This document shows positions 593-34,594 of a DNA stretch of 64,000 nt, one piece after another; within the stretch, counting starts at the first letter, position 1, and the number at the start of each line of letters is the position of its first letter. Both the position numbers and the translations under genes were made by a program. Location of the stretch: positions 1 through 64,000 of IMG/VR virus record IMGVR_UViG_3300020202_000061. One strand, 5' to 3'. The notes under the pieces were generated by a model. That model ran no database searches. It had not been told where the DNA came from and saw only the letters and a list, made by a program, of their open reading frames with translations.

Positions 593-1156
593 TTAGCCTT
601 TTGGATCAGGCCGTTTGCCATTCCAGAAATAAGGCATCGCCGCCTCCACACGGGATTCGATGATTTCATCGGGTTCCGCGCCCCTCAGGAGCCCCATCAG
701 GACCTTCAAGGGAGTTTCGTGCCGAACCACCAGGACAGACTGGTTCCGGTCTAGAGCGGGCCACAGCGTGCTTCTGGCCCAGGTCTGGATGCGATCTTCC
801 AGGTCCTGGTAGGATTCGCCACCGGGAGGGCACCGGAAATAATCACGTTCCCACAGCTTGTAGCGTTTCGGAGGCAGTTCCTGACGGATTTCCTCCCAGA
901 GACGCCCCTCGATGGCTCCGCCCCGGCGCTCGTCCAGGGCGTGCGTGATAATGACATCCTCTCGGAACAGACGGGCCGCGCAGATTGCCGCCTCACTCCG
1001 ACCGCAATAAATCACATCCCATTGACGGTCTCGAATCTCCACCCCACCCTCTCGAAGCCGTTCATAACCCCGAGCGGTCATAATATCGGTGTGGGCACCG
1101 GGCATCTTGGCATCGGCTTCGGCATGGGTCTGACCCACCCTCATCATGACTAACAT
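593..1156 (-). CDS. Histidine phosphatase (phosphoglycerate mutase-like) family protein with degenerate RHG motif
   Basis: MMRVGQT at the RHG position, LDER, PPGGESYQDLEDRI, VLVVRH. Confidence 0.7.
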   Translation of the reverse strand: MLVMMRVGQTHAEADAKMPGAHTDIMTARGYERLREGGVEIRDRQWDVIYCGRSEAAICAARLFREDVIITHALDERRGGAIEGRLWEEIRQELPPKRYKLWERDYFRCPPGGESYQDLEDRIQTWARSTLWPALDRNQSVLVVRHETPLKVLMGLLRGAEPDEIIESRVEAAMPYFWNGKRPDPKG

Positions 1157-5497: not shown

Positions 5498-5920
5498 TTA
5501 CTCTCCCCCGATCATAGCCGTCCGGAACTGAGCGAGGAATCGACGCAACAAACGGGGATCAGTGAAGGCAGCGTTCTTTCGAGGCTCTTTCTCGGTGCCG
5601 TATTCGAAATAGACGATCCGATTGAACGGGTTCTGGTCGAGGAACTCCATAGCCATCTGATGCAACTCCTTCAGGGCCGCTCGGGTTACTGTATCGGTCT
5701 GGAACTCCACACCCATTTCCTTGGTGTGCTGGAACACTCTGATCCAACCCCAACGATAGCCCATGGTGTAACTCCAATGTGGTTCTTGCTGGCCTGTGAG
5801 TTCACGAGCACGGTCACGGATCACTTCCCAATGAGCACCATCACGGAAATTACCGTCGTCCATGATCCAGCCAGCACGATTATAGATGTAGCCTTCTCTG
5901 AGAAGTTCGACCAACCTCAT
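5498..5920 (-). CDS. Putative internal head protein, single GWI-H-GWIR domain
   Basis: MRLVELLRE leader; AGWIMDDG..H..GWIRV. Confidence 0.7.
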   Translation of the reverse strand: MRLVELLREGYIYNRAGWIMDDGNFRDGAHWEVIRDRARELTGQQEPHWSYTMGYRWGWIRVFQHTKEMGVEFQTDTVTRAALKELHQMAMEFLDQNPFNRIVYFEYGTEKEPRKNAAFTDPRLLRRFLAQFRTAMIGGE

Positions 5921-7437
5921 CTGCGATGGCTCTCTGCCGCTTTCATCTTCGGACGTGGCACAAATTTACCGCCGATGTATTTCTGTGCATCCTCATCGAA
6001 TGTGTCGAGCCATTCGTTGTAGGCGTCGATCACCCTCTGACTGGGATTGTCAATCTGACGCATCAGCTTGGGATGGTTCTTGACCATGGTGATCAGGATA
6101 TCGTCGGGAATCTGATACTTGAAACGGGTCGAAGCCCTGAGGAGGTATTCGCCGCTCTTCGGAGCCGCAAGCTGCATCGCCTCACGAGTCGGGTGCGGGA
6201 TGTCCAGAATGGTCGAACCCACTCGGGACACTGCGAGCCTCTGGAGTTCCGGCGTCTGATCCTTGACGTGGGCAATCGTCCTGGGCACCCGCTGGACCGC
6301 AACTTTCATGGCCAGCGGGTCCTGATCCTTGATGACCTGAATCAGATCGGGATTCTCCTGTGCCACAAAGCGTTGAACCTCCGGACCCGGATTAACGATC
6401 TGACGGATACTCTCGGGATCAAGATGAACCGCATGCAACTTCAAGTCATCACTGATACCGGGGAACTTCTTGAGAATCTCGACCAGAGCCATGTTTCGAT
6501 GACCATAGCGGGGCTGCGGGGTCATATTCATGGCCAATTCAATCTCATCCTCGGTGGGATTCGAGATGTTAAAGAGGTTCCTCCAGTTCTTTCTGATACC
6601 GTTCTGCCTCATCTCCTCGCTGGGATTCTCGAACATCCAAAGTGCCCCATTGAGTTCGGCTTTCTTGGCGATTTCCGGAATCTTACTGAGCCAACGATAG
6701 TTGTGAGCGAGGCTGAACTTCTGTTGCTCCTCGGCGGGCTCTCCACGGATTGATTTGTACTTGGCCGGGAACGTCGGAATCTCCTTATCATTCTCGTCCA
6801 TGAACTGGTTGCTCTCGAAGTGCATCTGCACCTTTCGCCCGTTCGGGGTCAGGACGATGTAGAGCGGCCCATCTTTGTTGTAATCATTGAAGTGGTTCTG
6901 GCTCTCCGTAGATGCCGTACACCACTGGGTACCACGACCAAGATAGCAGGAGGCTTCCTCCGTGGTCGGCACATACACAGCGCCTTCCGGCCCCCTGTAG
7001 ACGACACGAACCTGCTCCTTCAACTTAGCATCGATCATGGCCTGAATCTGACGCTCACTCGTGGTGTCCACGAGTTCCATCGGCTTGATCACCTTCGTGT
7101 AGAGATCAATCGGTCCCTTGTAGCGGTTGATGTCGCGCTGTGCGGGTTCCAGCTTGGGCTTCAACGCATCGAATCGGCTCAGATAGCTCTTGGTTCGGTC
7201 GATATCCTCGACACGAAAGAGACCACCCAGATATGAACGGATCACCCACTGAGCATACTTTTTGTCCCCGGTCGGGTCCGTACTGATAATCACGTCGAAA
7301 AACGTCTCCGGATGCATGAACGTGCGACTGGGGGAATTACGCTCGTTCTGGACAGCGTGATCCCACAACGCCTGCTGGTAATTCCGGCGAAGGAAATCAA
7401 TGCGATTCTCTAACAGGAGGAATTCCAGTAATCTCAC
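5917..7437 (-). CDS. Putative internal head protein with GTQWCTA domain and C-terminal short helical repeats
   Basis: GTG start, MRLLEFLLLE leader; DPTGDKKYAQW, ASCYLGRGTQWCTA, QFMDEND; ~23 aa repeats (I.NP..E.Q..AV). Confidence 0.75.
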   Translation of the reverse strand: MRLLEFLLLENRIDFLRRNYQQALWDHAVQNERNSPSRTFMHPETFFDVIISTDPTGDKKYAQWVIRSYLGGLFRVEDIDRTKSYLSRFDALKPKLEPAQRDINRYKGPIDLYTKVIKPMELVDTTSERQIQAMIDAKLKEQVRVVYRGPEGAVYVPTTEEASCYLGRGTQWCTASTESQNHFNDYNKDGPLYIVLTPNGRKVQMHFESNQFMDENDKEIPTFPAKYKSIRGEPAEEQQKFSLAHNYRWLSKIPEIAKKAELNGALWMFENPSEEMRQNGIRKNWRNLFNISNPTEDEIELAMNMTPQPRYGHRNMALVEILKKFPGISDDLKLHAVHLDPESIRQIVNPGPEVQRFVAQENPDLIQVIKDQDPLAMKVAVQRVPRTIAHVKDQTPELQRLAVSRVGSTILDIPHPTREAMQLAAPKSGEYLLRASTRFKYQIPDDILITMVKNHPKLMRQIDNPSQRVIDAYNEWLDTFDEDAQKYIGGKFVPRPKMKAAESHRR

Positions 7438-7447
7438 GATAAGTCCC

Positions 7448-9097
7448 TCACATGACGTAATATTTACCCACAGACTGATTCAGGACTTTTTCGAACGCCT
7501 GTTCGAGTTGGTGCTCGAATCGAGCGATGAGTTTGGTGGTGAACTGTTCCGCACCCGGTCTCAGAGTGTGATCCCGGTCCAGACGACGTGGAAGCTGACG
7601 ATTCAGACGGACGCGGCCCGTCATCAGGTACTGGGTGAACCGCTCGTAGACCCACTCCGCATACTGCACGAGCTTTCCCTTACGGGCGGAGTTCATCCGC
7701 CCCAGCATGTGACCGAGGAGCTTCCCGTAGGCCCGGAAATAATCACGACGGAAAATCTCCCGATTCCAACCACTCACCTTGGGCCACTCCACCCCATAAG
7801 CACGCCGGGTTAAGCTCTCGACGAACTTATCGAACATCCCATGGATATTCGGCTCATAACCCTGAGTAAGGACGTGTGCGGTTCGGTGCGCCATCATCCA
7901 GGGCGACCGCATCGGCACATACGCCTCGTCCCGAAGGTTTCCGGTGTGAATGATGTTGATCCGGTTCCGCGCATTATTCAGGCGGGAGATTCTCTGGGCC
8001 ACATCCGGTCCCATACGCTCGCTGATCCAATCCAGCCGGACCTCACCCTTCTGGGTGTGCCAGTCATAGTCGGGATCAGGATTGGCCCAGAAATACAGAT
8101 TGAGGTTCTGTGGAATGCGGGCGAACTTCGTGGCGATCTTCCGGATCACTTCGGGATCACGAATCGCTTTCACATCCCTGTCCGAGAAGTGCTGTTTCTC
8201 ACGCTCGTAGCCGTGCCACTTCCGACGCTGCGTGGCCAGATTCTGTTCCAGATCGGGATCGACCTGGAAGTCACCGAGCGGGGCTTCGTTGAGCTTGGAC
8301 TTGAGCAGATCACGCACAAACGTATTCACGTCCACCTCGCGGTAGAACGATCTACTACCACCCTCGTACTCGTCAATGCGATAGACTTTCTTGGGCGAGT
8401 CCTTGATCAGGATGAGCATCCGGTAAATCGCGAGTCTCGTGACGTTGCGGATGGACCAACCAAAACCCAATCCATCGTCGGTCTCAACCACACGAATCCA
8501 CCCGCTCTTCAGGGCAAGACCACCAGCCATTCCATGCTCGTCCGGATTGTAATGCGGGAAATAGCCCTCCGCCTCTGCTTCATGATTCTCGAACCCGACC
8601 GGGATGAACTCACCTCGGTCAGTAATCCAATAACCATAGTCCGTACCGGGAATCTCAACGGCTTCGGTGATCACCCCACGATAACGCTGATTTAGCCAGC
8701 GCTGGGCCTGTCTGGGGTCGTCAAAGCGGCCCCAATCCTGACCGATCTGGAGCATGATCTTGTAGTCGAACCGATCCTTGATGATCTCGTAGACTTTACG
8801 AACCGCTTCACGGCTCGGTTCCAGACCGAGTTGGAACCCGATCTCACCACCCTCGGTGTAGACGCGGACCCACCCGTTACTGAACCCGTACAGGTAAAAG
8901 TCACTGTCCGGGACAAGATTCATCTTATTTTTGATGATATGAGGATCGCGTCCTTCCAGGTCCATATCGGAAACGATCTGATCGTAGAACGCCTCCTGCA
9001 TGATCTGGGTATGACCACCCTCGTGGTAGACCCCATCGGCGTCGATCCAGCCATAGTAGTAGAGATGAGATTCGAGGAGCAGGTCGATCAACTTCAT
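7448..9097 (-). CDS. Putative internal head polyprotein: 2x GWI-H-GWIR domain + HRxxH domain
   Basis: MKLIDLLLE leader (ATG 9097 or GTG 9100); modules linked by VITE and KLNE; PWMMAHRTAH. Confidence 0.75.
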   Translation of the reverse strand: MKLIDLLLESHLYYYGWIDADGVYHEGGHTQIMQEAFYDQIVSDMDLEGRDPHIIKNKMNLVPDSDFYLYGFSNGWVRVYTEGGEIGFQLGLEPSREAVRKVYEIIKDRFDYKIMLQIGQDWGRFDDPRQAQRWLNQRYRGVITEAVEIPGTDYGYWITDRGEFIPVGFENHEAEAEGYFPHYNPDEHGMAGGLALKSGWIRVVETDDGLGFGWSIRNVTRLAIYRMLILIKDSPKKVYRIDEYEGGSRSFYREVDVNTFVRDLLKSKLNEAPLGDFQVDPDLEQNLATQRRKWHGYEREKQHFSDRDVKAIRDPEVIRKIATKFARIPQNLNLYFWANPDPDYDWHTQKGEVRLDWISERMGPDVAQRISRLNNARNRINIIHTGNLRDEAYVPMRSPWMMAHRTAHVLTQGYEPNIHGMFDKFVESLTRRAYGVEWPKVSGWNREIFRRDYFRAYGKLLGHMLGRMNSARKGKLVQYAEWVYERFTQYLMTGRVRLNRQLPRRLDRDHTLRPGAEQFTTKLIARFEHQLEQAFEKVLNQSVGKYYVM

Positions 9098-10398
9098 CAC
9101 ATCACCATGATCTTGCCTACGGAACTCTCCATGAGATGGCCGAGTTCGTGATTGATGATCTTCTCGAACAGTTTGACGGAGCGGTTCAACTCCTGGACGC
9201 TACCCTCCAGGACGGCGTCGTCGTAGTGGTATTCCCCAGATTCATTCGGACGCCCCCAGGGGAGTTCCGAGGGGAGATTCGCGTTGAATACGGTTCGACC
9301 CAGCAGCATATACTGGGTGACGGCCTCCACCAGGAATTCACCGGGGTTGTTCAGGTTGCCATCGCGTGCGGCACGGGTGGTTCCCAGAACGTGGCAGATC
9401 GCCCGCACATAGGTGTTGCGGTACCAGGGACTGGCAAAGTCCTTCAGAGCCTCGGGATGTGCTTCCGCATCCAAATGATACTGCTTCAGGGTTTCCTCCA
9501 GGAACTCTCTGAACATCCCTGAAATTTTCCCACCCTGTGTGGTCATCAACAGGACGTGGGCGATACGGTGAGCGACCATCCAGGGCGAACGCAGGCTGAC
9601 AAATCCAACATCCGTCGCCAAGTTGTTCGCGATCACGATGGTGATCGACTGCTTCTGATCGGGCATCCGGAGGACACGACGAGCCGCGTCCGGACCGATA
9701 TGCAGACCGAGATTCCGAGGCCGTACCACACCCAGGAGAAGATTGCCGGGTCCACGCGTCTCCTCCGTGTTGGGATGACCCTCACTGGTCCAGAAATACA
9801 GATTGATCTTCTGTGGCACTTTAAGGAAGCGCCGCTCGATCTTCTTCAGCACGCCAGGATCATTCAGAGCCTTGACATCGACTGGTCGATAATCCGGGCG
9901 GAACTTCTCCTTCGGGCCGGTCCAGGTCTGCTGCTGGATCAGGTTGTTCGCGTTGAAATCGGGGTCTACCTGCATCGCATTGATCGGGGCCTCCGCCACC
10001 ATCCGAGTGGGACTCTTCATGAACTCGCGGATGAACGCGTTGGCCTTGCCGATGTCGGTGAAATCTCCATACCTGTCCTGCCCAGTGGTCCGTTCCGCAT
10101 CCACTCCGATCTCGTCCGGGTCCATCGTCCTGATGAGTTCGAGCACCGCATAGAGTGCACGATTCGTCACGGTCTCGATCAGGAAGTCGATCTCCAACCG
10201 GGTGTAACTCTGAACCACACGAACCCAACCCTTCCTCAGGGCCGCAACACGTCCCGCCACGGGCGAACCCTGGAAGCGGACGTTTGCCTCGTAATCGTGC
10301 TCCTGGAAGCCCACGTTGATGAACTCACCCTGATCGGTGATCCAGTAGCCGTAATCGGTCTCGGGGATGGCCCCCTCTAGGAGTTGGAGCAGTCTCAT
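9097..10398 (-). CDS. Putative internal head polyprotein: GWI-H-GWIR domain + HRxxH domain
   Basis: MRLLQLLE leader; YGYWITDQG..H..GWVRV; MVAE linker; PWMVAHRIAH. Confidence 0.75.
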   Translation of the reverse strand: MRLLQLLEGAIPETDYGYWITDQGEFINVGFQEHDYEANVRFQGSPVAGRVAALRKGWVRVVQSYTRLEIDFLIETVTNRALYAVLELIRTMDPDEIGVDAERTTGQDRYGDFTDIGKANAFIREFMKSPTRMVAEAPINAMQVDPDFNANNLIQQQTWTGPKEKFRPDYRPVDVKALNDPGVLKKIERRFLKVPQKINLYFWTSEGHPNTEETRGPGNLLLGVVRPRNLGLHIGPDAARRVLRMPDQKQSITIVIANNLATDVGFVSLRSPWMVAHRIAHVLLMTTQGGKISGMFREFLEETLKQYHLDAEAHPEALKDFASPWYRNTYVRAICHVLGTTRAARDGNLNNPGEFLVEAVTQYMLLGRTVFNANLPSELPWGRPNESGEYHYDDAVLEGSVQELNRSVKLFEKIINHELGHLMESSVGKIMVM

Positions 10399-11597
10399 AC
10401 GCGTGCCTCCGGCCGGAGCTTCATCAGGTCACGAACGAACGCGTTGGCCTCGGCCTCACCATCGAATCTATGCGTGGGCGGGGTAGCCCCGAGCAGATCA
10501 AAAGTGACGCGGATGGGTTCGGGCCAGGGGTCACTCTGCTTGATCAGTTTCAATACCCCATAGAGGGCAAGCTTCCGCACACTCCTTGGGTTCAGATCGA
10601 AGTCCAGATAGCGCGGTTCCGTCACGACCCTGATCCACCCCGCCTTGTAGGCGCGGACGATCCGATTCAGACCCTCACCCTTAGGGAAATACTGATCCGA
10701 GACGACCTGATGGAACTGACCGCGCACCGGAATGAATTTGCCCTCGGCGGTGATCCAGTAGCCGTAGGAGGTGAACGGGATTTCCTCCTCGGTGATCTGA
10801 CCCTTCAGGAGGGCGCGAATAGCCTGGGTGAGCTTCTGACGGGTCATTTCCCCACCCGCTTTTCCAGTCTCCAGATAGCAATTATTGGTCTCGGCGTTCT
10901 TGATTAGCGCTAGAAGACTTTTCAACGCGTCTTTTGTGGCGTATCTGGGATCGAGTTCGACATCAAATTCATGTCCGTTATCGATGACTCTGATCCACCC
11001 TGAACGCTTCGCCACACCTGTGCCATCCGTAAGCTTCTCCATAGGGATGCCAAAGGCTTTACGTGCGTCTCTTTCATGTTGTTCATGTGCGACTGCATGC
11101 ACCTTACCCTGCGCGTCGATCCAATACCCATACGGAGACCAATCGTGGTTTTCCGCCACCATCTGGGGTCGCCGCTTCCCGAGGAGGAAACGCATGAAAT
11201 ACTTGGTGAGTTCTTGCTTGGTCGGGTAGTGCCGACGCTTGAACTTGGGCTGGTCGTAGGCGAACCGCACATCGAACGCGATCTGGTTGTCGTCGTGAAT
11301 CTGATGGATGTAGGGGAGCACCGCACGCAGCGCCTCGGCCGTGCACGTCTTGGGATCGCGCACCGCGATGCTCACGCCGTTACGGTCGATGATCCTGATC
11401 CAGCCCAGACGGTATGCCTGTTCGTAACCGGTAATTCCGGGTGTGGTTATCTCCTCCGGATGCCTCTGAAAATACCTGTGAGCAACCATCGCATGGCTCT
11501 CGTAGGGCACCTCCAGATACTCACCATGATGGGTGATCCAGTAACCGTATTCGGTATCGGGGATGTTGGCCTCAATCAGGAGGTCGAGCAGTCTCAT
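10395..11597 (-). CDS. Putative internal head polyprotein: 3x GWI-H-GWIR domain
   Basis: Start reassigned to ATG 11597 (MRLLDLLIE, ATGA overlap); three YGYWI modules linked by MVAE and QITE. Confidence 0.75.
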   Translation of the reverse strand: MRLLDLLIEANIPDTEYGYWITHHGEYLEVPYESHAMVAHRYFQRHPEEITTPGITGYEQAYRLGWIRIIDRNGVSIAVRDPKTCTAEALRAVLPYIHQIHDDNQIAFDVRFAYDQPKFKRRHYPTKQELTKYFMRFLLGKRRPQMVAENHDWSPYGYWIDAQGKVHAVAHEQHERDARKAFGIPMEKLTDGTGVAKRSGWIRVIDNGHEFDVELDPRYATKDALKSLLALIKNAETNNCYLETGKAGGEMTRQKLTQAIRALLKGQITEEEIPFTSYGYWITAEGKFIPVRGQFHQVVSDQYFPKGEGLNRIVRAYKAGWIRVVTEPRYLDFDLNPRSVRKLALYGVLKLIKQSDPWPEPIRVTFDLLGATPPTHRFDGEAEANAFVRDLMKLRPEARV

Positions 11598-12910
11598 GCC
11601 GCTTTCCCCCTCTGACGGTTCGCCTTGTAGAGTTCCCGGAAATACTGATAGAGTTGGTTCTTGGTCGGGTAGCTTCCCCATGGGGGCAACTTGAAACCAC
11701 GTCCTATATCGAAAATGATCGTGTGGGGATCACGCCGATCATCCACCCCACGAATGAAGGGGAGGATTGCGCGGGCTGCGGCCGGTGCAACATCTCTGGG
11801 GTCCAGGATCGACACGTGCACGTAATCGTTGGGATCATTCGGGTCGATGATCCTGATCCAGCCCTTCTTGTAGGCGGTCTCGAACACCCCAAGCTCTCGG
11901 GTATTGCCCTCATGGGGATTCTGTTCGAACCACTGCTGCGCCGTCCAATGATGGGCCTCGTCGTCCACCTGGAGATACTCCCCGGTGTGGGTGATCCAGT
12001 AGCCATAGTAGGTGCCGGGGATATCCACGGCCTCCGCCACATTCCTGCGAGAGGTGGAGAAGAACAACTTCTTGAAAAACTGCATGACCTCGGCCTTCTC
12101 CGGTCGATGCGGCTTTGTGAAATTCAGACTCGTGTGCGGATCGTACACGTCCAGGTAGATCGTGGTGGCATCGGTCTGGGCGAGATAGCCCAGAACCGTA
12201 TTCAGGGCTTCGCGGGTGAGCTTCTTCGGGTCTTCCACGCTGATGTGGATGACGTGCTCCAGATTGCCTCCGGCACGAACCGTATACTTCTGCTGGTCCA
12301 CGATCCTGATCCAACCACGTTCATAAGCCGTGGTGATTGTGTGATCGTAGGTGAGGTGGCTGTAATCGATTCCTAGATGACGGGCCGCGACCGCACCATG
12401 AGCCTCAGCCGGAACCGGAATCATTCTGCCCCGGTCGGTGATCCAGTAGCCATAGTCGGTCTCGGGAATCTCCATCTCCATCAGGGTGGATTCCCTGACA
12501 ATCTGACGCCGCATCTGATTGAGCCAGCGTAGTGCCCGCCTAGCGTCTGGGAACTCGTCGTAGGTGTTGTTGAGTTGAATCCCGATTAGGCGACCGTCCA
12601 CGATGTCCTTGATCAGTCTCTTCATGCCCCGGAGCGCATTCTTGGTGGTGTTGCGACTGACCTCGAATGCCACCTCACGATTGGACGAACTCACCCTGAT
12701 CCAACCCGCTTTGAACGCGTATCCGTAGTGCTCGGCTTCGACCAAGTCGTATACCGACTGGCCCTTCTGGAGCGGCCCATGATCGCGCAGAATATCATCG
12801 GCGAAGTATTCGGACACGATTATCTCATGACTTCCCGATAGGAACTTGCCCTCGGACGTGATCCATCCGTAGATGGTTTGGGATTCGGTGAGGAAGTCGA
12901 GCAGTCTCAT
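11594..12910 (-). CDS. Putative internal head polyprotein: 3x GWI-H-GWIR domain
   Basis: MRLLDFLTE leader; three modules linked by IVRE/TLME and NVAE. Confidence 0.75.
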   Translation of the reverse strand: MRLLDFLTESQTIYGWITSEGKFLSGSHEIIVSEYFADDILRDHGPLQKGQSVYDLVEAEHYGYAFKAGWIRVSSSNREVAFEVSRNTTKNALRGMKRLIKDIVDGRLIGIQLNNTYDEFPDARRALRWLNQMRRQIVRESTLMEMEIPETDYGYWITDRGRMIPVPAEAHGAVAARHLGIDYSHLTYDHTITTAYERGWIRIVDQQKYTVRAGGNLEHVIHISVEDPKKLTREALNTVLGYLAQTDATTIYLDVYDPHTSLNFTKPHRPEKAEVMQFFKKLFFSTSRRNVAEAVDIPGTYYGYWITHTGEYLQVDDEAHHWTAQQWFEQNPHEGNTRELGVFETAYKKGWIRIIDPNDPNDYVHVSILDPRDVAPAAARAILPFIRGVDDRRDPHTIIFDIGRGFKLPPWGSYPTKNQLYQYFRELYKANRQRGKAA

Positions 12911-15033
12911 TGCCGATCCCTCACGAAAGCCACACCACGAATTCCGTTCCAGGCCCCGGACATCCGGTAACGACCATCATCCTTAAGGAGTTCGAAACGA
13001 TATCCCTGAGGGGTCCACCCCGCGTAGTTTTTCGCGTTGAATTCGTTGCGCTTGGCATCCTCCCCGTTGATCTCCAACACGGCGGGTTTCACGCGCTGGA
13101 TGAACTCCAGGGTGATTCGCTTGAGCATCTCCGTGATCTTCGGGAACAGTCCGGTCCCACCCTGGGGACGCTTCCCAATCACACGCCAGACCCTGAAATA
13201 ATGATCATCCGGATCGAACGGACCGCGCAGGAACCGGGCCTCAAAATCGTACGGACCGATCCGGAACTGAGCAGTGTTCTGGTCCTCCCAGTAGTAGCGA
13301 TCCTGAACGGGCTGATCCTCCAGCAGTCTGGGCTGATGATACCTGAAGAAGTAAATCCGATATTCCGGATAGGCACGACGCAACACCTTATGGACGTAAT
13401 CCAGACGGTGCTCGTCCATCGGGCGTCGATCATCCGGATCGCGAATGCTGATCATCTTTCGTCGATCATCAATACGACCCACGGCCAGGGCGTTCCCTGC
13501 CTCATCCGGATTGTGCATGGACCGGGACACACCCTGATCCTTCACGGTCTTCAATTTCCCACCCGGCATCACATAGAACATCAACCCACCCCTGTGATGA
13601 CCGATGTCGAAATAGTGGAGACGCTCGTCCTCCATGATCTGCCTGATCTCACTCGCGCCTTTTCCGAAGTACCAAATCTCATACTCCGGGTATTGCTGAC
13701 GAAGCTTCTTCGCGGCGAACTCGATGGTGCGCTCGGGCAGATCGAAGTAGGAGTTTCCCGGAGCCAATGGGGTGCGGATGCTGATCTTCTTTCGGAGATC
13801 ATCGATACGTCCCACCGCGAGGGTATTCTCCTCGATCTCGGGATTGTGGTTCATCAACCCATCACGCTCATCACTGACAGACTCGAAGTCTTCAGGGGTG
13901 GCACCGACCATCATGTAGCCGACATCATCGACGATGAGCTTTCCACCCTTCAGGAGGTACCAGAGTTTGGCCCCACGGTAGTGGCCGATCTCCTGGTAGT
14001 TATCCCAGGATTCGTGGATCACATCCCGCTGGGGATTGAACCCGCTCTGAATGGCCCGCTTGATCTGGTTCGGATAGAACGCGAGCCAGACAGTTTCAGA
14101 CCCACCTGAAGAATTGTTCTCTTCGAACATAACCCCATCGAAGCCCGCAGCTTTAATGGCCTGGACGAACCATTCGCCTTCCTTATCGTCGAAAAACTCC
14201 CAGGTGTTCTGGGGATTGCCAATGTAATTCTCCATCCAATCCATATCCACGCCTTGGGCGGCAAGCTTCTGGACATCCTTCCAATAGATGCCAGCCTCGT
14301 AAGTAATTCTCAATGGATTCTGGATGCTCAGATAGACCGGGATCACTCCACCCTTGCCACGATGTCTGGGTTGGTTCACAAATTCCCTGGCGAACGCTTC
14401 GTTCTCGGCGAAGTAAAATCCGTGGCGCTGCACCTCCACGGGAATACCCATGAACGTGGTGAATCCTTTACGATTCTCAAACTTATCGAAGAGCGGGCTC
14501 GGGGTGCCATGGAACACCACTAGGGGATTTCCCTGCTGGTCCACGACCTTGCTCTGCTTGAACCACGCACGAAATTGGGGGCTCTGGATAAGTGAAGGCT
14601 GTACATCTTCACGAAGGCTGCTCTTGAATTTTTCAAGCGCCTCATGACCGCGAATCTTCGAGATGATTTTGACCTGACGGGGATCGAACGCGACATACTC
14701 TTGCTGACCATTCGGATATTGGCCAATCATGCTGTCATACCCGGCCGCTTCCAATTCGTCACGGCGCTTCGGACTGACCGACTGGAACGTCTTGGCATCG
14801 GTCCGGTGATAGGGATTCTGAAATAGGAGTTCGGCCTGGATCACGATGGGCTCATCCCCATCGACTTCCGAATCCATCATAGCGTAATCCAACGCGTCCT
14901 TGAAGGACGGACTGAAATAGGCTCCCACGCCGAATGCTCCGCCTTGTCGGCGAAACTCATCCTTATCGATGGCCGTGCCATGATAGCCCACAAGCGGTGT
15001 GATGTTGGTTTCGAGCAGGTCTAGGAGCCTCAT
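12907..15033 (-). CDS. Polyvalent protein: 2x ADP-ribosyltransferase (ART-PolyVal-like) + 2x IGH domain + C-terminal domain
   Basis: MRLLDLLE leader; GYHGT..GVGAYFS..AGYDSM..EYVAFDPRQVK and FRAWFKQSKVVDQQGNPLVVFHGT..GFYFA..AGFDGV..AFYPNQIK; duplicated IGH..GGKL..HNP..LAVGRIDD..ISIR. Confidence 0.75.
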   Translation of the reverse strand: MRLLDLLETNITPLVGYHGTAIDKDEFRRQGGAFGVGAYFSPSFKDALDYAMMDSEVDGDEPIVIQAELLFQNPYHRTDAKTFQSVSPKRRDELEAAGYDSMIGQYPNGQQEYVAFDPRQVKIISKIRGHEALEKFKSSLREDVQPSLIQSPQFRAWFKQSKVVDQQGNPLVVFHGTPSPLFDKFENRKGFTTFMGIPVEVQRHGFYFAENEAFAREFVNQPRHRGKGGVIPVYLSIQNPLRITYEAGIYWKDVQKLAAQGVDMDWMENYIGNPQNTWEFFDDKEGEWFVQAIKAAGFDGVMFEENNSSGGSETVWLAFYPNQIKRAIQSGFNPQRDVIHESWDNYQEIGHYRGAKLWYLLKGGKLIVDDVGYMMVGATPEDFESVSDERDGLMNHNPEIEENTLAVGRIDDLRKKISIRTPLAPGNSYFDLPERTIEFAAKKLRQQYPEYEIWYFGKGASEIRQIMEDERLHYFDIGHHRGGLMFYVMPGGKLKTVKDQGVSRSMHNPDEAGNALAVGRIDDRRKMISIRDPDDRRPMDEHRLDYVHKVLRRAYPEYRIYFFRYHQPRLLEDQPVQDRYYWEDQNTAQFRIGPYDFEARFLRGPFDPDDHYFRVWRVIGKRPQGGTGLFPKITEMLKRITLEFIQRVKPAVLEINGEDAKRNEFNAKNYAGWTPQGYRFELLKDDGRYRMSGAWNGIRGVAFVRDRQ

Positions 15034-16178
15034 GTCGTGTGCAGCCCCAGCTTCTTGCGCTCGTCCTCATCCCCGGTCGGATCGGAACGCTTCTCACGGT
15101 CCGTGATCACATCATGGATCGAACGTAGCTCGAACTTGCGCTCGCGATCCTTCTCGGAGCGATCCCGCAGGAAGTCGCGGAACTTGGCGGTCCAGTTGTA
15201 GGGTTGCCACTCACGCTTGTTGTCGATCTCTCGAAGCTTCCACTTCCCACCCTGAAGGCGATAGAGACGATTCGGCACAAAATCGATGCGGAGGAACCAG
15301 TCCCCTTCGATGGCATTGGCCGGGAATGTCGTGCCCTGGGTCACGGGCAGACCATTATCGGGCTTGCCATCGTCGTTCCAACGATACGGCTTTCTCCGAG
15401 GGTGATCCGGGTCGAACCACATGATGGTGGTGTCGTACCACGTGGTGTAGGCGTGCTCGTTTGCGAGCCGCTGGTTCGCCTCGGTCAGTGCCATGTCCTG
15501 AGCCTGGGTCCGGGCTTGTTCGGCCAGAGTCTTTCCGTACTGGTCCTTGCGCTCGAACAGATCGAGGAACTCCTGCTGGTGACGGAGCGGCTTCAGGACC
15601 ACACCCATGATGTGTCTGATCCACATCGGGTCCACCCCGTTCGGTGCCCACGCGTGCTTCCGCACCTCATACCACTTGTTGGCCACTCGACCGTTCTGAT
15701 CGACATCACGGAGGTGGGGCATCTCGATCACGTCGCCCGGAATCAATCGGCGACCGAGTTCGGCCTCCATCGTGTTCACATGGAGTTCCAGCGTGATGAT
15801 GTCGTTGGCCAAGGCCATACCGAACTTGGCGTATTCGAGTTCGAACTGGCTGATCTGGTAGACCCCACGAAGCATGGGGATCACCTCGAAGTCATACTCA
15901 CGGTCGCGGTTCTCACCGAGGATCGTGTCCTGCAACCCCATGAACGCACCGATCCGGGTCGGTTCCTCCACCCGGTTTTTATCATCCACCTTCACGTTCA
16001 GGGCATCGCGATCCTGCGCGAATACCCCCTTCATCCTGTAGACGTTGACCAGGACCCCACCCATGTTGATGTGATCCTTCACGATGTCCCGGATGAACGC
16101 GGAGGTTTTCCGGGGCGCACCACCGTGGGTACCCGCCTCATACAGTTCGAACGGCTTCACCGGAGAAAACTTTGGCAT
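15030..16178 (-). CDS. Neck / head completion protein (T4 gp14-like)
   Basis: LQDTILGENRDREYD, LRGVYQI, KFGM, LGRRLIPGDVIEMPHLRD; adjacent to the gp13-like gene. Confidence 0.75.
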   Translation of the reverse strand: MPKFSPVKPFELYEAGTHGGAPRKTSAFIRDIVKDHINMGGVLVNVYRMKGVFAQDRDALNVKVDDKNRVEEPTRIGAFMGLQDTILGENRDREYDFEVIPMLRGVYQISQFELEYAKFGMALANDIITLELHVNTMEAELGRRLIPGDVIEMPHLRDVDQNGRVANKWYEVRKHAWAPNGVDPMWIRHIMGVVLKPLRHQQEFLDLFERKDQYGKTLAEQARTQAQDMALTEANQRLANEHAYTTWYDTTIMWFDPDHPRRKPYRWNDDGKPDNGLPVTQGTTFPANAIEGDWFLRIDFVPNRLYRLQGGKWKLREIDNKREWQPYNWTAKFRDFLRDRSEKDRERKFELRSIHDVITDREKRSDPTGDEDERKKLGLHTT

Positions 16179-16184
16179 CGGGGG

Positions 16185-17000
16185 TTATCCTCGGATCGGC
16201 AATGGAATCTCGGAGTTGTCCGCGTAGAGTCTCAAATCCTCTTCCAGCTTCTCGCACTCATCCAGGCCGGACTGCTTCAGGGCATCACCCTTCAGGGTGG
16301 TTCCGCCTTGAGCGCCCGGCAGCGATCCGAACAACGAGTACTTCTCACCGAGGTGAATCTTCAGCTTTGCCAGGGTGAATCGTTGGAGCCAGTTATAGGC
16401 TTGGTGATCGTTGAGGAGTTCCTCATACCGCTTCATCACCCAAATCTTCAGCCCGACCGTCTCCTTCACGCGCGGGGTCTGGGTGATGATCAGGGTGTGG
16501 TTCTCGTTGCGGAACCGGAAATGGATGTGGCGGGCGAACAGACGGTCCAAGGTCTCCTGGTACTGCATGAGAAAGTCGTACCGGGCCAAGTCCATCGTCG
16601 CCCCATACTGACCCGCGCCGCCACGGAGCAGGATGTTGGCGGTGGCCGCACCGAACGATTCGAACCGTCCCACACCACCACCGACGCCCCCGAACAATCC
16701 ACGACCACGGAAGATGTACTCGATGTTGTCGATGCGCTCGTTCAACTGATAGACCTGTCGGAGCGGCTCCAGCGTGAGAAACGCATACCGCACGTAGACC
16801 CGTCGAGACCGGGTGACACGATACTGGTTTACGGCCGCCTCGAACGCGATCTGGTAGTCGAGGTCTTCCAGATGGACCGTGATCCGCGCTCCACCCAGTT
16901 GGGTGTTACAGATCAGGAACAGGCGTTCCATCTTCTTTCGGGTTTCCTCGGAGACTTTCTGTCCGAAATCAAGGGGTTCAATCGTGCTAAGGTCGCTCAT
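16185..17000 (-). CDS. Neck protein (T4 gp13-like)
   Basis: Start reassigned to ATG 17000 (GGAG RBS, TAAATA at 17027-32); LGGARITVHL, WLQRFTLAKLKIHLGEKYSLFGSLPGAQGGTTLKGDALK. Confidence 0.85.
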   Translation of the reverse strand: MSDLSTIEPLDFGQKVSEETRKKMERLFLICNTQLGGARITVHLEDLDYQIAFEAAVNQYRVTRSRRVYVRYAFLTLEPLRQVYQLNERIDNIEYIFRGRGLFGGVGGGVGRFESFGAATANILLRGGAGQYGATMDLARYDFLMQYQETLDRLFARHIHFRFRNENHTLIITQTPRVKETVGLKIWVMKRYEELLNDHQAYNWLQRFTLAKLKIHLGEKYSLFGSLPGAQGGTTLKGDALKQSGLDECEKLEEDLRLYADNSEIPLPIRG

Positions 17001-17072
17001 CGGGGTCTCCCCAAGGGGTTTCCCGGTATTTAGGACTTGAATTTGTTTGGGTAATTCCTCATCTCCACAGGG

Positions 17073-32694: not shown

Positions 32695-33585
32695 TTAGGG
32701 CTGGGGAACATAACGGTTCAGAACCTCACGGAGGTCCCTCGCCATTGCCTCGATGTCCGGGTCAATTCTGATGGCCTCGGACAGACTACCATAGTGCATC
32801 TCCAAGCATTCCAGCAGAAGAGCTTTGATGGCCTCTTCGTCTGGTCTGTTCCTCAATGTAGACTTGGCATTGAGGTCTTCAAGATGCTTTTCCTTCTTGG
32901 TGAACCAATCCTTCAACTCATCCAGGGTCCACTCACCACGACGGATCGACTTTAGCTGTTCGCGATTCGCTTCCAAGTCGAGGTCATGGAGATCGAGAAT
33001 CTGTTCGCACTCGTTCGCCAATCGCACAACATGATAGGCGAACTTCGTGTCGTAACCGAACTTCTCGACCAATTCCATACGCTTCGGATTGGTCGTGTTG
33101 CGCTTGCCGATGGCGTTCATCTGAGCGTAGGCGTAGCCCTTGAACTTCGGAAACGCCCCACGATGCAGGAACAGCTTTCTGTGCTCGCGTACTCTTTCAC
33201 CGATCTGCGTCGTATGAAGGACGCAGCGACGAGGCGTAAACAACGAGTCCACCATGTTCGGGTTGTTCTCCATGCACAGGTGGAAATACTTCACGATGTT
33301 GTAGACCGAGAAGTCATATTCCTTTCTGGCGGATTCGTCCTTCACATGGTGTTGCTGCCACTGCTCGAAGCGCTCTTTCTGGCGACCGAATCCCATGATC
33401 TCCCCACGCAGATGCGGGAAAACCATGTCCTTGTGGGGCACACAGAATCCGTAAACGTCGCTGTCGGAGGTGTCCGAGGATACGCCATAGGCCACCGAGC
33501 CCATCAACGTAAGATAATGGGTGTTATCCGGGAGATATGGCGGGGGTTGAATCAACCCCTTCTTTTTCAGGTCGTGGAGTAGCAT
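32695..33585 (-). CDS. DNA polymerase beta superfamily nucleotidyltransferase (RlaP-like)
   Basis: GSVAYGVSSDTSDSDVYG, NNPNMVDSLF, FKGYAYAQM, GYDTKFAYHVVRL, LKSIRRGE. Confidence 0.85.
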   Translation of the reverse strand: MLLHDLKKKGLIQPPPYLPDNTHYLTLMGSVAYGVSSDTSDSDVYGFCVPHKDMVFPHLRGEIMGFGRQKERFEQWQQHHVKDESARKEYDFSVYNIVKYFHLCMENNPNMVDSLFTPRRCVLHTTQIGERVREHRKLFLHRGAFPKFKGYAYAQMNAIGKRNTTNPKRMELVEKFGYDTKFAYHVVRLANECEQILDLHDLDLEANREQLKSIRRGEWTLDELKDWFTKKEKHLEDLNAKSTLRNRPDEEAIKALLLECLEMHYGSLSEAIRIDPDIEAMARDLREVLNRYVPQP

Positions 33586-33886: not shown

Positions 33887-34594
33887 TTAGATGCTGAGTT
33901 CCTGATCGATGGCCCGACCATGACACTGGGTCAACTTGTCCAGATAACCGGTGTTGCGGAGAACCTTGAACGCAAGGTTCTCGACCCGTGATTCCCCGCC
34001 CTTGGCAAGTCCAGCCTGACGCATACCCCAGACCTTATCCTTGATCTTGTTGATGGCCTCGGGATTCCTGCACGGAGGCAAATTGTCGATTATGTGCACG
34101 ATATGAGCGACCTTCCTGCGAATGGCCGGTTCATTGATCTGGGGTTTCTGATAGGTCGGCTTCTTTAGCCAGTCATCACGAAGCAGGGAATACTCACCCT
34201 GGGTCACTGCGGGTTCCTTGGTGTCCTCCACGTAGAGTTCCACCGGGAAGCCGTGCACGGTGATGTCACGGGCATCGTTCCAGATACGCTTCTTCGATTG
34301 GATGTAGTCGTCAAGGAGTTCCGGGCAAAGTTCACGAAACTGGTCGAAATCCACGATCAGATGCAGATCAATATCCCGGAACTTTGTCCAGTTGAATCCG
34401 GCCGAGGAGCCGGTTACCACCACATCCTCCACGCGAAGGCCCGGAATCTTCAAGTAGGTCAGGAAGGCTTCGGCGATCCTCATCAGGGCCTCACGGACCT
34501 CCGGGCGCATCTCAAACCCCTGCCATACAGCGGGGTTCAGTTCTTCGTGGTACTGGATCGTGTCCAGGGGGTCTTGTAGCTCGTTGAGTCTCAT
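33887..34594 (-). CDS. Nucleotidyltransferase (pol beta-like), late, with MRLNEL leader
   Basis: VTGSSAGFNW..DIDLHLIVD, VELYVED, RQAGL..GGE.RVENLAFKVLR; TAAATA at 34601. Confidence 0.8.
   Translation of the reverse strand: MRLNELQDPLDTIQYHEELNPAVWQGFEMRPEVREALMRIAEAFLTYLKIPGLRVEDVVVTGSSAGFNWTKFRDIDLHLIVDFDQFRELCPELLDDYIQSKKRIWNDARDITVHGFPVELYVEDTKEPAVTQGEYSLLRDDWLKKPTYQKPQINEPAIRRKVAHIVHIIDNLPPCRNPEAINKIKDKVWGMRQAGLAKGGESRVENLAFKVLRNTGYLDKLTQCHGRAIDQELSI

What the first reader, a model, noticed from the sequence alone, without database searches (positions are those of the whole stretch)
5498..12910. Unnamed ~120-140 aa domain, G(Y)WI-x-x-x-G..H..GW[IV]R, amplified to 10 divergent copies in five genes
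Seen: 1 copy in 5498, 2 in 7448, 1 in 9097, 3 in 10395 and 3 in 11594. All keep GWI/GYWI, a following G, one invariant His and GW[IV]R[VI], and most have a T.xAL helix. There are two subtypes: short G..GxH and long V....H...A. The rest is highly diverged. Inference: invariant His and Arg suggest a catalytic or nucleotide/nucleic-acid-binding site, and amplification with divergence fits an anti-defence arms race (nuclease, signal-nucleotide sponge or cleaver). It loosely recalls a GY.LPDG..H..G.IR domain I remember from phage polyvalent proteins; I cannot confirm that.
Basis: partly seen in the sequence, partly recalled or inferred. Interest (0 to 1): 0.78.

Follow-up and report, generated by a model that had tools for sequence, protein, structure and literature searches.

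The report
Capsid-targeted tandem modules of unnamed phage domain
A giant T4-like phage carries ten diverged copies of an undescribed 120-150 residue protein domain, and the sequence signals around them suggest they are loaded into the phage head, cut apart and injected into the host with the DNA; what the domain does chemically is still unknown.

Summary
Ten homologous modules of 121-152 aa lie in five adjacent minus-strand genes (leave-one-gene-out HMM E <= 1.7e-12), and the window holds no further copy.

The domain matches nothing in Pfam, PHROGs, NCBIfam, PADLOC or PDB sequences. It is nevertheless common in metagenomes: 788 representative clusters. It occurs alone, in tandem arrays, and in 1,000-4,000 aa proteins alongside ART-PolyVal, 2H phosphoesterase and Acb1 domains. 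His is invariant in 111 aligned modules; Y, G, W, G, G-W and R are kept in at least 90%.

The AlphaFold model is confident (pLDDT 91) and shows an alpha/beta fold. It has no convincing solved relative; the best match is gelsolin-like at Z 5.8.

The main new point is context. The window comes from a 347-401 kb T4-like jumbo phage, and the genes sit between the gp13/gp14 and gp15 homologs. All seven genes of the block start with a leader such as MRLLDLLIE|A, which resembles the T4 capsid targeting sequence MKTYQEFIAE|A. Every module boundary carries (L/I/V)-x-E followed by a small residue, the T4 prohead-protease site type.

My best reading is that these are head-packaged polyproteins, cut into single modules and injected. 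The biochemical activity is unresolved. This would be a new variant of a known kind.

The parts
12485..12910 (-). Gene 11594, module 1 (short subtype), with leader MRLLDFLTE|S
   Evidence: Module HMM and leave-one-out test; leader.
12029..12484 (-). Gene 11594, module 2, preceded by VRE|S
11597..12028 (-). Gene 11594, module 3, preceded by VAE|A
11148..11597 (-). Gene 10395, module 1, with leader MRLLDLLIE|A. The true start codon is at 11597.
   Evidence: P0003 is the 400-aa product.
10785..11147 (-). Gene 10395, module 2, preceded by VAE|N
10398..10784 (-). Gene 10395, module 3, preceded by ITE|E. This is the module that was modelled.
   Evidence: AlphaFold2 model: pLDDT 91.3, pTM 0.86. Also.
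9964..10398 (-). Gene 9097, module 1, with leader MRLLQLLE|G, followed by VAE|AP
9100..9963 (-). Gene 9097, C-terminal domain (about 290 aa) with an invariant PWM-AHR-AH motif. It is unrelated to the module.
   Evidence: Eight homologs. Standalone versions start with leader MRLIQLLE|AP at the same residue. Model pLDDT 75, no fold match.
8663..9097 (-). Gene 7448, module 1 (short subtype), with leader MKLIDLLLE|S
8255..8662 (-). Gene 7448, module 2, preceded by ITE|A and followed by LNE|AP
7451..8254 (-). Gene 7448, C-terminal domain, homologous to that of gene 9097
   Evidence: 34% identity, shared invariant columns.
5501..5920 (-). Gene 5498, single module (short subtype), with leader MRLVELLRE|G
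5917..7437 (-). Leader-bearing gene with no module (506 aa, MRLLEFLLLE|N); function unknown
   Evidence: PHROG 17056, function unknown; leader; 82.5% identical ortholog in the sister phage.
12907..15033 (-). Leader-bearing ADP-ribosyltransferase gene (708 aa, MRLLDLLE|T), first gene of the block
   Evidence: ART-PolyVal PF18760, E 2.5e-37. The sister-phage ortholog has two modules inserted.
15030..17000 (-). gp14-like and gp13-like neck genes upstream of the block
   Evidence: PHROG 11591 virion structural protein and PHROG 211 head-tail adaptor Ad2. The sister-phage ortholog hits Phage_T4_gp13.
17027..17033 (-). CTAAATA motif 26 nt upstream of the gp13-like start; candidate late promoter of the operon that contains the block
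   Evidence: Ten matches against 1.6 expected, none of 100 shuffles reaching 10. Nine of the ten lie 5-39 nt upstream of a scripted gene start; the tenth has a start about 45 nt downstream by eye. CTAAATA is the late promoter of T4-like phage Aeh1 (PMC1524935).
4692..5489 (-). gp15-like tail sheath stabiliser directly downstream of the block
   Evidence: Pfam T4-gp15_tss, E 8.5e-22.

Best explanation
The ten modules are paralogous copies of an undescribed alpha/beta domain. A T4-like jumbo phage encodes them as capsid-delivered cargo.

The proposed sequence of events, all of it inferred from sequence rather than shown:
1. The five module genes, the ART gene and one gene of unknown function are transcribed late, as part of the neck/tail operon.
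2. The shared 8-10 residue N-terminal leader (M-R/K-L-L/V/I-D/E/Q-L/F-L..E) acts like the T4 capsid targeting sequence and takes each protein into the prohead core.
3. The prohead protease cuts after the Glu of the (L/I/V)-x-E motif that ends the leader and separates every module. This releases free units of 13-17 kDa, plus the separate C-terminal domains.
4. The units are ejected with the DNA into the next host and act in the first minutes of infection.

My best guess at what a single module does is weaker. Its invariant His (at the N-cap of helix 1), its Arg (strand 3, in GWIR) and its frequent Asp/Glu (end of strand 5), flanked by Tyr, Trp and Trp, may form one pocket. That pocket would bind or process a phosphate-bearing, nucleotide-derived ligand such as an RNA end, an NAD/ADP-ribose product or a signalling nucleotide. 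The variable surfaces of the paralog types would tune what each copy recognises.
For: **T4-like jumbo phage**
- Tail sheath is 38-41% identical to PA5oct, Atu_ph07 and Phosso.
- gp15, gp13 and gp14 homologs flank the block.
- The contig is 347,504 bp, or 401,308 bp in another assembly.

**Leader**
- A loose leader pattern hits 10 genes out of 1,280 candidate starts in six frames. All ten are real minus-strand genes and seven are consecutive.
- Synonymous codons differ between leaders, so conservation is at the protein level.
- T4 propeptides read from NC_000866 have the same design: IPII/IPIII MKTYQEFIAE|A, gp24 MAKINELLRE|S, gp22 MLKEQLIAE|A, gp23 FLTE|A.
- In T4 the first 10 residues suffice for capsid targeting. 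Residues 8 and 10 govern cleavage (PMC9026906).

**Boundaries**
- All 12 domain boundaries in the five genes carry (L/I/V)-x-E followed by A/G/S/N/E.
- In leader-bearing homologs 36 of 39 internal boundaries have the motif, against 27 of 83 in leaderless homologs and 9-13% of control windows.
- Standalone versions of the C-terminal domain start MRLIQLLE|APINAM... at exactly the residue where the fused versions read VAE|APINAM....
- In the syntenic slot of a 409-kb sister phage the same units are split among genes differently: 9 modules in 4 genes, 2 of them inside the ART protein.
- Module order is shuffled between phages.

**Other leader-bearing genes are effector-type enzymes**
- ART-PolyVal; Amidoligase_2 and a weak nucleotidyltransferase hit.

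**Late expression**
- CTAAATA is enriched and lies upstream of structural genes and of three other leader genes (PMC1524935).

**Domain properties**
- His is invariant in 111 modules and Arg is kept in 95%.
- Confident model.
- Co-occurrence with 2H, Acb1, ART, LigD 3'-phosphoesterase and LMW phosphatase domains.
Against: - No protein-level data exist. Packaging, cleavage and injection are inferred from sequence alone.
- I did not find the gp21-type prohead protease of this genome. It is not in the window, nor in the next 20 kb of the longer contig, and the rest of the genome could not be read.
- The cleavage motif is short. Val at P3 in the linkers is not the classical T4 L/I.
- A third of the boundaries in leaderless proteins also carry the motif, so part of it may belong to the domain or its linker.
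- The homolog sets compared are phylogenetically related, so the contrast is not a clean statistical test.
- On biochemical function: only three polar positions are conserved. No nuclease, sponge or phosphoesterase fold matched. Module pI ranges from 4.7 to 9.5 with no common charge signature. I could not check whether the conserved residues cluster or are exposed.
Confidence: 0.5

Rival explanations
1. The modules are non-enzymatic injected inhibitors or decoys, like T4 IPI*. Each paralog type would bind a different host defence protein, and the invariant residues would only hold the fold together.
For: - The module types are old, diverged (17-44% identity) and shuffled as cassettes between phages. 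This is the pattern described for T-even internal proteins, which share little beyond the targeting sequence (PMC3012670).
- The domain has few conserved polar residues.
- No enzyme fold matched.
Against: An absolutely invariant His and a 95% conserved Arg across 111 very diverged modules are unusual for purely structural positions. The same signature is kept in every copy, which suggests one shared chemistry rather than many different protein targets.
Confidence: 0.22
2. The module is a structural or packing unit of the head interior, analogous to the inner-body paralogs of phiKZ-like phages. It would fill or organise the large capsid and carry fused enzymes along, with no activity of its own in the host.
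For: - It is the most numerous domain in these proteins, with up to 9-10 copies per protein, and is fused to many unrelated enzymes.
- It sits among structural genes.
- Giant phages are known to have multi-paralog, protease-processed internal head proteins (PMC9026906).
Against: - In T4 the 10-residue leader alone is enough for packaging (PMC9026906), so a carrier domain is not needed.
- Single-module proteins of 120-160 aa are common.
- The modules lack the basic charge expected of DNA-packing proteins.
- The domain also occurs in leaderless giant proteins of other phage types.
Confidence: 0.13
3. The proteins are not packaged at all. They would be ordinary cytoplasmic phage proteins, with the shared N-terminus being a translation or folding feature and the x-E motif simply the domain linker.
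For: No protease was found in the sequence I could read. The motif is short, and it also appears at 33% of boundaries in proteins without the leader.
Against: - The leader is shared by proteins with unrelated domains: ART, amidoligase, the C-terminal domain and gene 5917.
- It is conserved at the protein level, not the DNA level.
- It closely matches T4 propeptides.
- Gene fusion and fission occur exactly at the motif.
- Leader presence and the linker motif go together.
Confidence: 0.12

Closest known systems
T4 internal proteins IPI, IPII, IPIII and Alt (cargo tagged with a capsid targeting sequence, processed by the prohead protease gp21)
   Same: - A short N-terminal leader ends in hydrophobic-x-Glu followed by a small residue.
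- The cargo behind a common leader is diverse and fast-evolving.
- An ADP-ribosyltransferase is among the cargo, as with T4 Alt.
- The phage has a T4-like morphogenetic core.
   Different: - The cargo here is a tandem polyprotein of up to three copies of one domain, with a protease-type site at each boundary.
- The genes form one block inside the neck/tail operon instead of being scattered.
- The domain is unrelated to any T4 internal protein.
- The ART is of the H-Y-E ART-PolyVal type, whereas Alt belongs to the R-S-E clade (PMC5512222).
- Packaging and cleavage are not demonstrated here.
Polyvalent proteins of phages and conjugative elements (Iyer et al. 2017, PMC5512222)
   Same: - The module occurs in 1,000-4,000 aa proteins with ART-PolyVal, 2H phosphoesterase and other effector domains.
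- It lies in virion-gene neighbourhoods.
- There is extensive duplication and rearrangement of one domain between related phages, as described there for the PBECR domains of Helicobacter jhp1044.
- That paper also predicts proteolytic processing.
   Different: - In this window the domains are spread over several smaller genes rather than one giant protein.
- No Pfam LPD, PBECR or other PolyVal family matches the module.
- Processing here would be by the head protease at leader-like sites, not by an embedded zincin peptidase.
Inner-body and ejection-protein paralog families of phiKZ-like giant phages
   Same: These are multi-paralog internal head proteins cut after Glu at several sites by a gp21-related protease (PMC9026906).
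   Different: Different phage lineage and no sequence relationship. No inner body is known for this lineage.
Gelsolin/villin-type domains (closest solved fold)
   Same: A three-layer alpha/beta arrangement. Fifteen of the top twenty VIA-align matches are gelsolin-family domains, at Z 4.6-5.8 over 74-92 residues.
   Different: Z is below the level the tool considers meaningful, sequence identity is 6-17%, and Foldseek finds nothing. No functional inference is justified.

Membership tests
T4-type capsid-targeted internal proteins | N-terminal propeptide of about 10 residues ending in L/I-x-E, followed by the mature protein | tested here: met
   All seven genes of the block, and three further genes, start with M-R/K-L-...-L-x-E. 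The T4 sequences used for comparison were read from NC_000866.
T4-type capsid-targeted internal proteins | The genome encodes a gp21-family prohead protease | not tested
   None in the window or in 20 kb beyond it; the rest of the 347-401 kb genome was not readable. gp21 homologs occur in 2,574 phage records, including the jumbo phages RaK2 and RsoM2USA, so its presence here is only expected.
T4-type capsid-targeted internal proteins | The protein is present in virions in cleaved form and is injected | not testable with these tools
   The genome is known only from metagenomes, and no proteomics exist.
T4-type capsid-targeted internal proteins | Late expression together with head and tail genes | tested here: inconclusive
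   The genes are contiguous with the gp13/gp14 and gp15 homologs, with overlapping stops and starts. A CTAAATA motif lies upstream of gp13 and is enriched 10 against 1.6 expected. There are no transcript data.
Polyvalent proteins (Iyer et al. 2017) | Several domains of disparate activity in one polypeptide | tested here: inconclusive
   The window genes hold only module repeats, with or without one other domain. Homologs do combine the module with ART-PolyVal, 2H, Acb1, GNAT and phosphatase domains, and the sister phage fuses two modules into the ART protein.
Polyvalent proteins (Iyer et al. 2017) | Neighbourhood of virion or packaging genes | tested here: met
Pfam LPD / PBECR / other PolyVal domain families | A significant match to the family model | tested here: not met
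   No such family matched at E <= 0.1 for the five proteins, nor at E <= 0.01 for any of 111 modules. LPD families that were never deposited in Pfam could not be checked, because the paper's supplement is not held.
Pfam DUF4859 | A domain-level match above the gathering score | tested here: inconclusive
   The only matches are summed sub-threshold hits to the YGYWI..G region: gene 10395 at 20.5 bits (cut-off 22.6), P0009 at 28.8 and P0012 at 25.9, with no single stretch passing. None of 111 single modules matches.
Gelsolin-like fold | Structural superposition with Z clearly above background over the whole domain | tested here: inconclusive
   Best Z is 5.8, below the tool's caution line of 8. 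Foldseek's best hit has E 0.16.

The most novel reading that the evidence does not exclude
The block encodes a 'cluster munition' delivery system. Interchangeable effector cassettes are strung together as polyproteins. One universal leader loads them into the capsid, and the head-maturation protease separates them at leader-like sites. Evolution can then fuse, split and reorder cassettes freely without changing the mature products. The cassette itself would be a new nucleotide-directed enzyme or binding fold used widely by uncultured phages against host immunity.
Probability: 0.3. Interest if true: 0.8.

Novelty: new variant of a known kind. Interest (0 to 1): 0.6.

Why it matters
**A large unnamed family.** The domain defines a family of 788 clusters at 50% identity, with up to ten copies per protein. 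It has no name, no structure and no representative in cultured-phage family libraries. It sits next to known counter-defence enzymes, so it is a good candidate for a new early-infection effector.

**A testable rule for cargo.** If the delivery model is right, head-protease sites act as the 'punctuation' of effector polyproteins. That would explain why these genes fuse and split so freely. It would also allow the mature injected proteome of uncultured T4-like jumbo phages to be predicted from sequence alone.

**A possible tool.** The leader could serve for loading foreign proteins into large capsids, as the T4 targeting sequence already does.

Tried and rejected
**Family and sequence searches that found nothing for the module**
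- Pfam, PHROGs, NCBIfam and PADLOC scans of the five proteins.
- Pfam and PHROGs scans of all 111 aligned modules.
- Profile searches of PDB sequences; best E 0.021, not meaningful.
- tblastn against 50,697 GenBank phage records with gene 11594, P0019 and P0118 gave no match. P0009 matched only through its non-module parts.
- Megablast of the locus against phages gave no match.
- ESM Atlas feature searches gave scores of at most 0.76, which is uninformative.

**Structure searches**
- Foldseek against PDB found no hit. Weak repeated DNase I-like/EEP and RNase E subdomain hits (TM 0.23-0.38) are not significant.
- AFDB, BFVD and Atlas returned only uncharacterised proteins.

**Ideas tested or considered and dropped**
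- PBECR RNase. No family match, and the described topology (an N-terminal helix, then 4-5 strands) differs from a domain that opens with a beta-hairpin. No barnase, colicin or RelE structure appeared in the searches.
- His-Me/HNH finger. The hairpin-helix-His arrangement suggested it, but only one His is conserved and there is no second metal ligand.
- A relationship between the module and the internal repeat in the ART gene. The module HMM does not detect that repeat.
- TATAAATA as the late promoter. It occurs once, which is chance level.
- Intrinsic terminators inside the block are not above chance.

**Steps that failed for technical reasons**
- Finding the prohead protease by walking the longer contig reached only the terminase, UvsX and UvsW genes.
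- The PA5oct region around the sheath gene has no annotated protease.
- The first two search for related loci attempts failed because the alignments were too diverged.


Full report
**1. What is in the sequence**

Region 5498-15033 holds seven consecutive minus-strand genes with overlapping or abutting stops and starts. Five of them contain the repeated module:
- gene 5498-5920: one copy;
- gene 7448-9097/9100: two copies plus a C-terminal domain;
- gene 9097-10398: one copy plus a homologous C-terminal domain;
- gene 10395-11597: three copies;
- gene 11594-12910: three copies.

The ten modules are 121-152 aa long and 17-44% identical. An HMM built without any one gene still detects all of that gene's modules, at E 4e-34 to 1.7e-12 for a nominal database of 1e5 sequences. 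A six-frame scan of the window finds these ten copies and nothing else. The start of gene 10395 is the ATG at 11597: this gives a 400-aa product identical to database protein P0003 and overlaps the upstream stop.

**2. The family outside the window**

The module has no match in any curated resource I could search:
- Pfam, PHROGs, NCBIfam and PADLOC;
- PDB sequences;
- GenBank phages by tblastn.

A profile of the ten copies, searched against 1.84 billion representative proteins, found 788 proteins at E <= 1e-3 and 173 at E <= 1e-10. These fall into three groups: single-module proteins of 120-160 aa, tandem arrays of 2-6 modules, and giant proteins of 1,000-4,000 aa with up to nine or ten modules. 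The ten examined have no source name and come from metagenomes.

The giant proteins also carry other domains:
- 2H phosphoesterase: 7 of 40 scanned;
- ART-PolyVal: 6;
- Acb1: 3;
- one each of LMW phosphatase, LigD 3'-phosphoesterase, GNAT, a nucleoside deoxyribosyltransferase-like domain and HTH domains.

This is the make-up of the 'polyvalent proteins' of Iyer et al. (PMC5512222). Two contexts I fetched are phage-like, with homing endonucleases and many small ORFs.

In an alignment of 111 modules the His is invariant. Y, G, W, G (hairpin), G-W and R are each kept in 90-99%. An acidic residue near the end of strand 5 is kept in 80%.

**3. Fold**

AlphaFold2 with the 111-sequence alignment gave a confident model of the third module of gene 10395 (pLDDT 91.3, pTM 0.86). 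The order of elements is:
- beta-hairpin (YGYWI, turn Gly);
- helix 1, starting at the invariant His;
- helix 2;
- hairpin (GWIRV, then strand 4);
- helix 3, the 'T.xAL' helix;
- hairpin whose first strand ends in the conserved Asp/Glu;
- helix 4.

Searches with this model gave no usable match:
- Foldseek against the PDB: nothing (best E 0.16).
- AlphaFold DB clusters, BFVD and the ESM Atlas: only uncharacterised proteins. These include a weak hit in Atu_ph07 and a viral cluster fused to a phage lysozyme domain.
- VIA-align against 48,161 chains: a consistent but weak series of gelsolin/villin/fragmin domains at Z 4.6-5.8. The tool itself warns that this range may reflect only a common arrangement.

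No characterised domain therefore explains the module. I could not read model coordinates, so I do not know whether His, Arg and the acidic residue form one exposed site.

**4. Genomic context**

The window is bases 1-64000 of IMG/VR contig IMGVR_UViG_3300020202_000061 (347,504 bp). An ENA assembly holds the same genes on a 401,308-bp contig.

The phage is a distant T4-like jumbo myovirus:
- its sheath is 38-41% identical to PA5oct, Atu_ph07 and Phosso;
- a gp15-type sheath stabiliser lies directly downstream of the block;
- gp14-like and gp13-like neck genes lie directly upstream.

The first gene of the block (12907-15033) encodes an ART-PolyVal ADP-ribosyltransferase (E 2.5e-37).

**5. The leader**

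All seven genes begin with nearly the same short peptide:

| Gene | N-terminus |
|---|---|
| 5498 | MRLVELLRE\|G |
| 5917 | MRLLEFLLLE\|N |
| 7448 | MKLIDLLLE\|S |
| 9097 | MRLLQLLE\|G |
| 10395 | MRLLDLLIE\|A |
| 11594 | MRLLDFLTE\|S |
| 12907 | MRLLDLLE\|T |

- A loose pattern for this leader hits ten genes among 1,280 candidate starts in all six frames, with no hit in a non-coding frame.
- The other three genes are 33887-34594 (weak nucleotidyltransferase hit), 34600-36537 (Amidoligase_2) and 51374-52387.
- Codon usage differs between the leaders, so selection acts on the peptide.
- About 39 of the 150 best homologs start the same way, for example MRAFELFEE, MKLIELFES and MRLLDLFEA.

I read the T4 propeptides from the T4 record for comparison:

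| T4 protein | Sequence at the cleavage site |
|---|---|
| IPII, IPIII | MKTYQEFIAE\|A |
| gp24 | MAKINELLRE\|S |
| gp22 | MLKEQLIAE\|A |
| gp21 | MNEPQLLIE\|T |
| gp23 | FLTE\|AEIGG |

In T4 the first ten residues of IPIII are sufficient for capsid targeting. Residues 4 and 7 matter for targeting and residues 8 and 10 for gp21 cleavage. Foreign proteins carrying this tag are packaged and delivered (PMC9026906; PMC10229621). T-even internal proteins are described as a diverse set of anti-defence proteins sharing only the targeting sequence (PMC3012670). The window's leaders have the same length, the same hydrophobic pattern and the same L/I-x-E end.

**6. The boundaries**

Every junction in the five genes carries (L/I/V)-x-E followed by a small or acidic residue. 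This holds for leader-to-module, module-to-module and module-to-C-terminal-domain junctions: ITE|A, VAE|N, ITE|E, VRE|S, VAE|A, LNE|AP and VAE|AP. In the model the ordered domain begins two to three residues after this Glu.

Three comparative results argue that the motif marks units rather than belonging to the fold.
- **It goes with the leader.** In homologs that have the leader, 36 of 39 internal boundaries carry the motif. In leaderless homologs 27 of 83 do, and 9-13% of control windows do. The sequences are related, so this is suggestive and not a formal test.
- **Fusion and fission occur at the motif.** The C-terminal domain exists as a standalone gene in relatives. There it starts MRLIQLLE|APINAMQVDPD, exactly where the fused forms read VAE|APINAMQVDPD.
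- **The same units are packaged differently in a sister phage.** In the syntenic slot of a 409-kb sister phage (gp13, gp14, [block], gp15, sheath) the genes are 927, 261, 565, 299, 421 and 502 aa. They hold 2, 2, 4, 0, 1 and 0 modules respectively, and the two in the 927-aa gene sit inside the ART protein. The flanking orthologs stay 80-89% identical there.

A maximum-likelihood tree of 44 modules shows that each window module has closer orthologs in other phages' proteins than any paralog in the window, at different positions in the chain. Two other lineages (P0010, P0017) have their own internal expansions. The copies are therefore old types that recombine as cassettes, and tandem expansion has happened more than once in the family.

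**7. Expression**

The T4 late-promoter core TATAAATA is not enriched. CTAAATA occurs ten times against 1.6 expected, and none of 100 shuffles reached ten. Nine of the ten copies lie 5-39 nt upstream of a scripted start codon on the same strand. For the tenth, at 590-596, the script found no start; one lies about 45 nt downstream by eye. The genes preceded by the motif include the gp13-like gene that heads the operon containing the block, two large tail-fibre-like genes, and the three other leader-bearing genes. CTAAATA is the reported late-promoter consensus of T4-like phage Aeh1 (PMC1524935). No convincing terminator interrupts the block. Late co-expression with structural genes is therefore plausible but not shown.

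**8. Interpretation**

The best-supported account concerns delivery. These are capsid-targeted proteins, made late, loaded into the prohead through the leader, cut after the boundary Glu residues by the head protease into single modules (and separate C-terminal domains), and injected with the DNA. This places them with T4 internal proteins and Alt, and with the phage class of polyvalent proteins.

What is shown:
- homology of the modules;
- spread of the family;
- conservation of the signature residues;
- the predicted fold;
- the T4-like genomic context;
- the leader and boundary motifs, and their comparative behaviour.

What is inferred:
- targeting to the capsid;
- cleavage at the boundaries;
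- injection into the host;
- the timing of expression.

The main gap is that I could not find the gp21-type protease of this genome. It is not in the window or in the next 20 kb, and the rest of the genome was unreadable with these tools. gp21 homologs are found in 2,574 phage records, including jumbo T4-like phages, so one is expected here.

The biochemical role of a module is open. An invariant His, a near-invariant Arg, a frequent acidic residue and three aromatic residues would suit a pocket for a nucleotide-like ligand or a metal-independent phosphotransfer reaction. The fusion partners (ART, 2H, Acb1, 3'-phosphoesterase) work on NAD, RNA ends and cyclic nucleotides. That is association, not evidence. 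The rivals are a pure inhibitor or decoy role, a head-interior structural role, and no packaging at all. Each is listed with its own refutation test.

**9. Novelty**

Capsid-targeted cargo and polyvalent proteins are both known. What is new:
- the domain itself: a large, unnamed family without a structure, absent from cultured-phage family libraries;
- its organisation as tandem polyproteins, with a leader-like protease site at every junction;
- direct comparative evidence that genes fuse and split at those sites.

I cannot exclude that the domain is one of the 40 'LPD' domains of Iyer et al. that never reached Pfam, because the supplement is not held.

Noticed in passing
window 12907-15033 (-): The ART gene holds two ART-like regions. 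Residues 10-125 give only a weak PARP hit; residues 165-330 match ART-PolyVal. After them comes a different internal tandem repeat (about residues 345-455 and 472-565, 38% identical, BLASTP E 3e-22) with the motif GH-RG..GGKL..HNP..AVGRIDD-RK-ISIR. The module HMM does not detect this repeat.
   Followed up: partly
window 7451-8254 and 9100-9963 (-): The C-terminal domain shared by genes 7448 and 9097 has an invariant PWM-AHR-AH motif (His-x-x-x-His spacing as in zincin HExxH, but with Arg in place of Glu) and downstream Glu residues. Only 8 homologs were found. The model has pLDDT 75 and no fold match; Pro-Pro endopeptidase zincins appear only at Z about 4. It may be a degenerate or atypical metallopeptidase.
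   Followed up: partly
window 590, 1666, 17027, 25174, 28821, 34601, 36560, 42879, 52393, 55703: CTAAATA occurs 10 times against 1.6 expected. Nine copies lie 5-39 nt upstream of a scripted gene start on the same strand; for the copy at 590 a start lies about 45 nt downstream by eye. It is a candidate late-promoter motif, as in T4-like phage Aeh1.
   Followed up: partly
window 33887-34594, 34600-36537, 51374-52387 (-): Three more genes carry the same leader outside the block. One has a weak nucleotidyltransferase hit, one has Amidoligase_2 (E 2e-7) and one has no match. Each has its own CTAAATA motif upstream.
   Followed up: partly
L014:4745-13687 (JGI 3300068441 Ga0613821_000003, 409 kb): A sister jumbo phage has the same slot between gp14 and gp15, filled differently. 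Its ART protein is 927 aa with two modules inserted. The C-terminal domain is a separate 299-aa gene. There is no counterpart of the single-module gene 5498.
   Followed up: yes
L007:13715-14044 (just beyond the window start on the 401-kb ENA contig): A phage-encoded homolog of ribosomal protein S21 (Pfam Ribosomal_S21) lies near the terminase. It is also present in the sister phage.
   Followed up: no
window 593-1156 (-) and 32695-33585 (-): A histidine phosphatase family gene (His_Phos_1) lies next to the tail genes. Elsewhere there is an RlaP-type RNA-repair nucleotidyltransferase (E 1e-17).
   Followed up: no
window 36599-37273 (-): A 224-aa ORF starts MNFLYHGT. This resembles the Y/F-H-G-T motif that opens both ART regions of gene 12907. 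It has no family hit and no leader.
   Followed up: no
window 5917-7437 (-): A leader-bearing 506-aa protein with no module matches only PHROGs of unknown function (17056, 5925, 25923). It is 82.5% identical in the sister phage, so it is much better conserved than the module genes around it.
   Followed up: no
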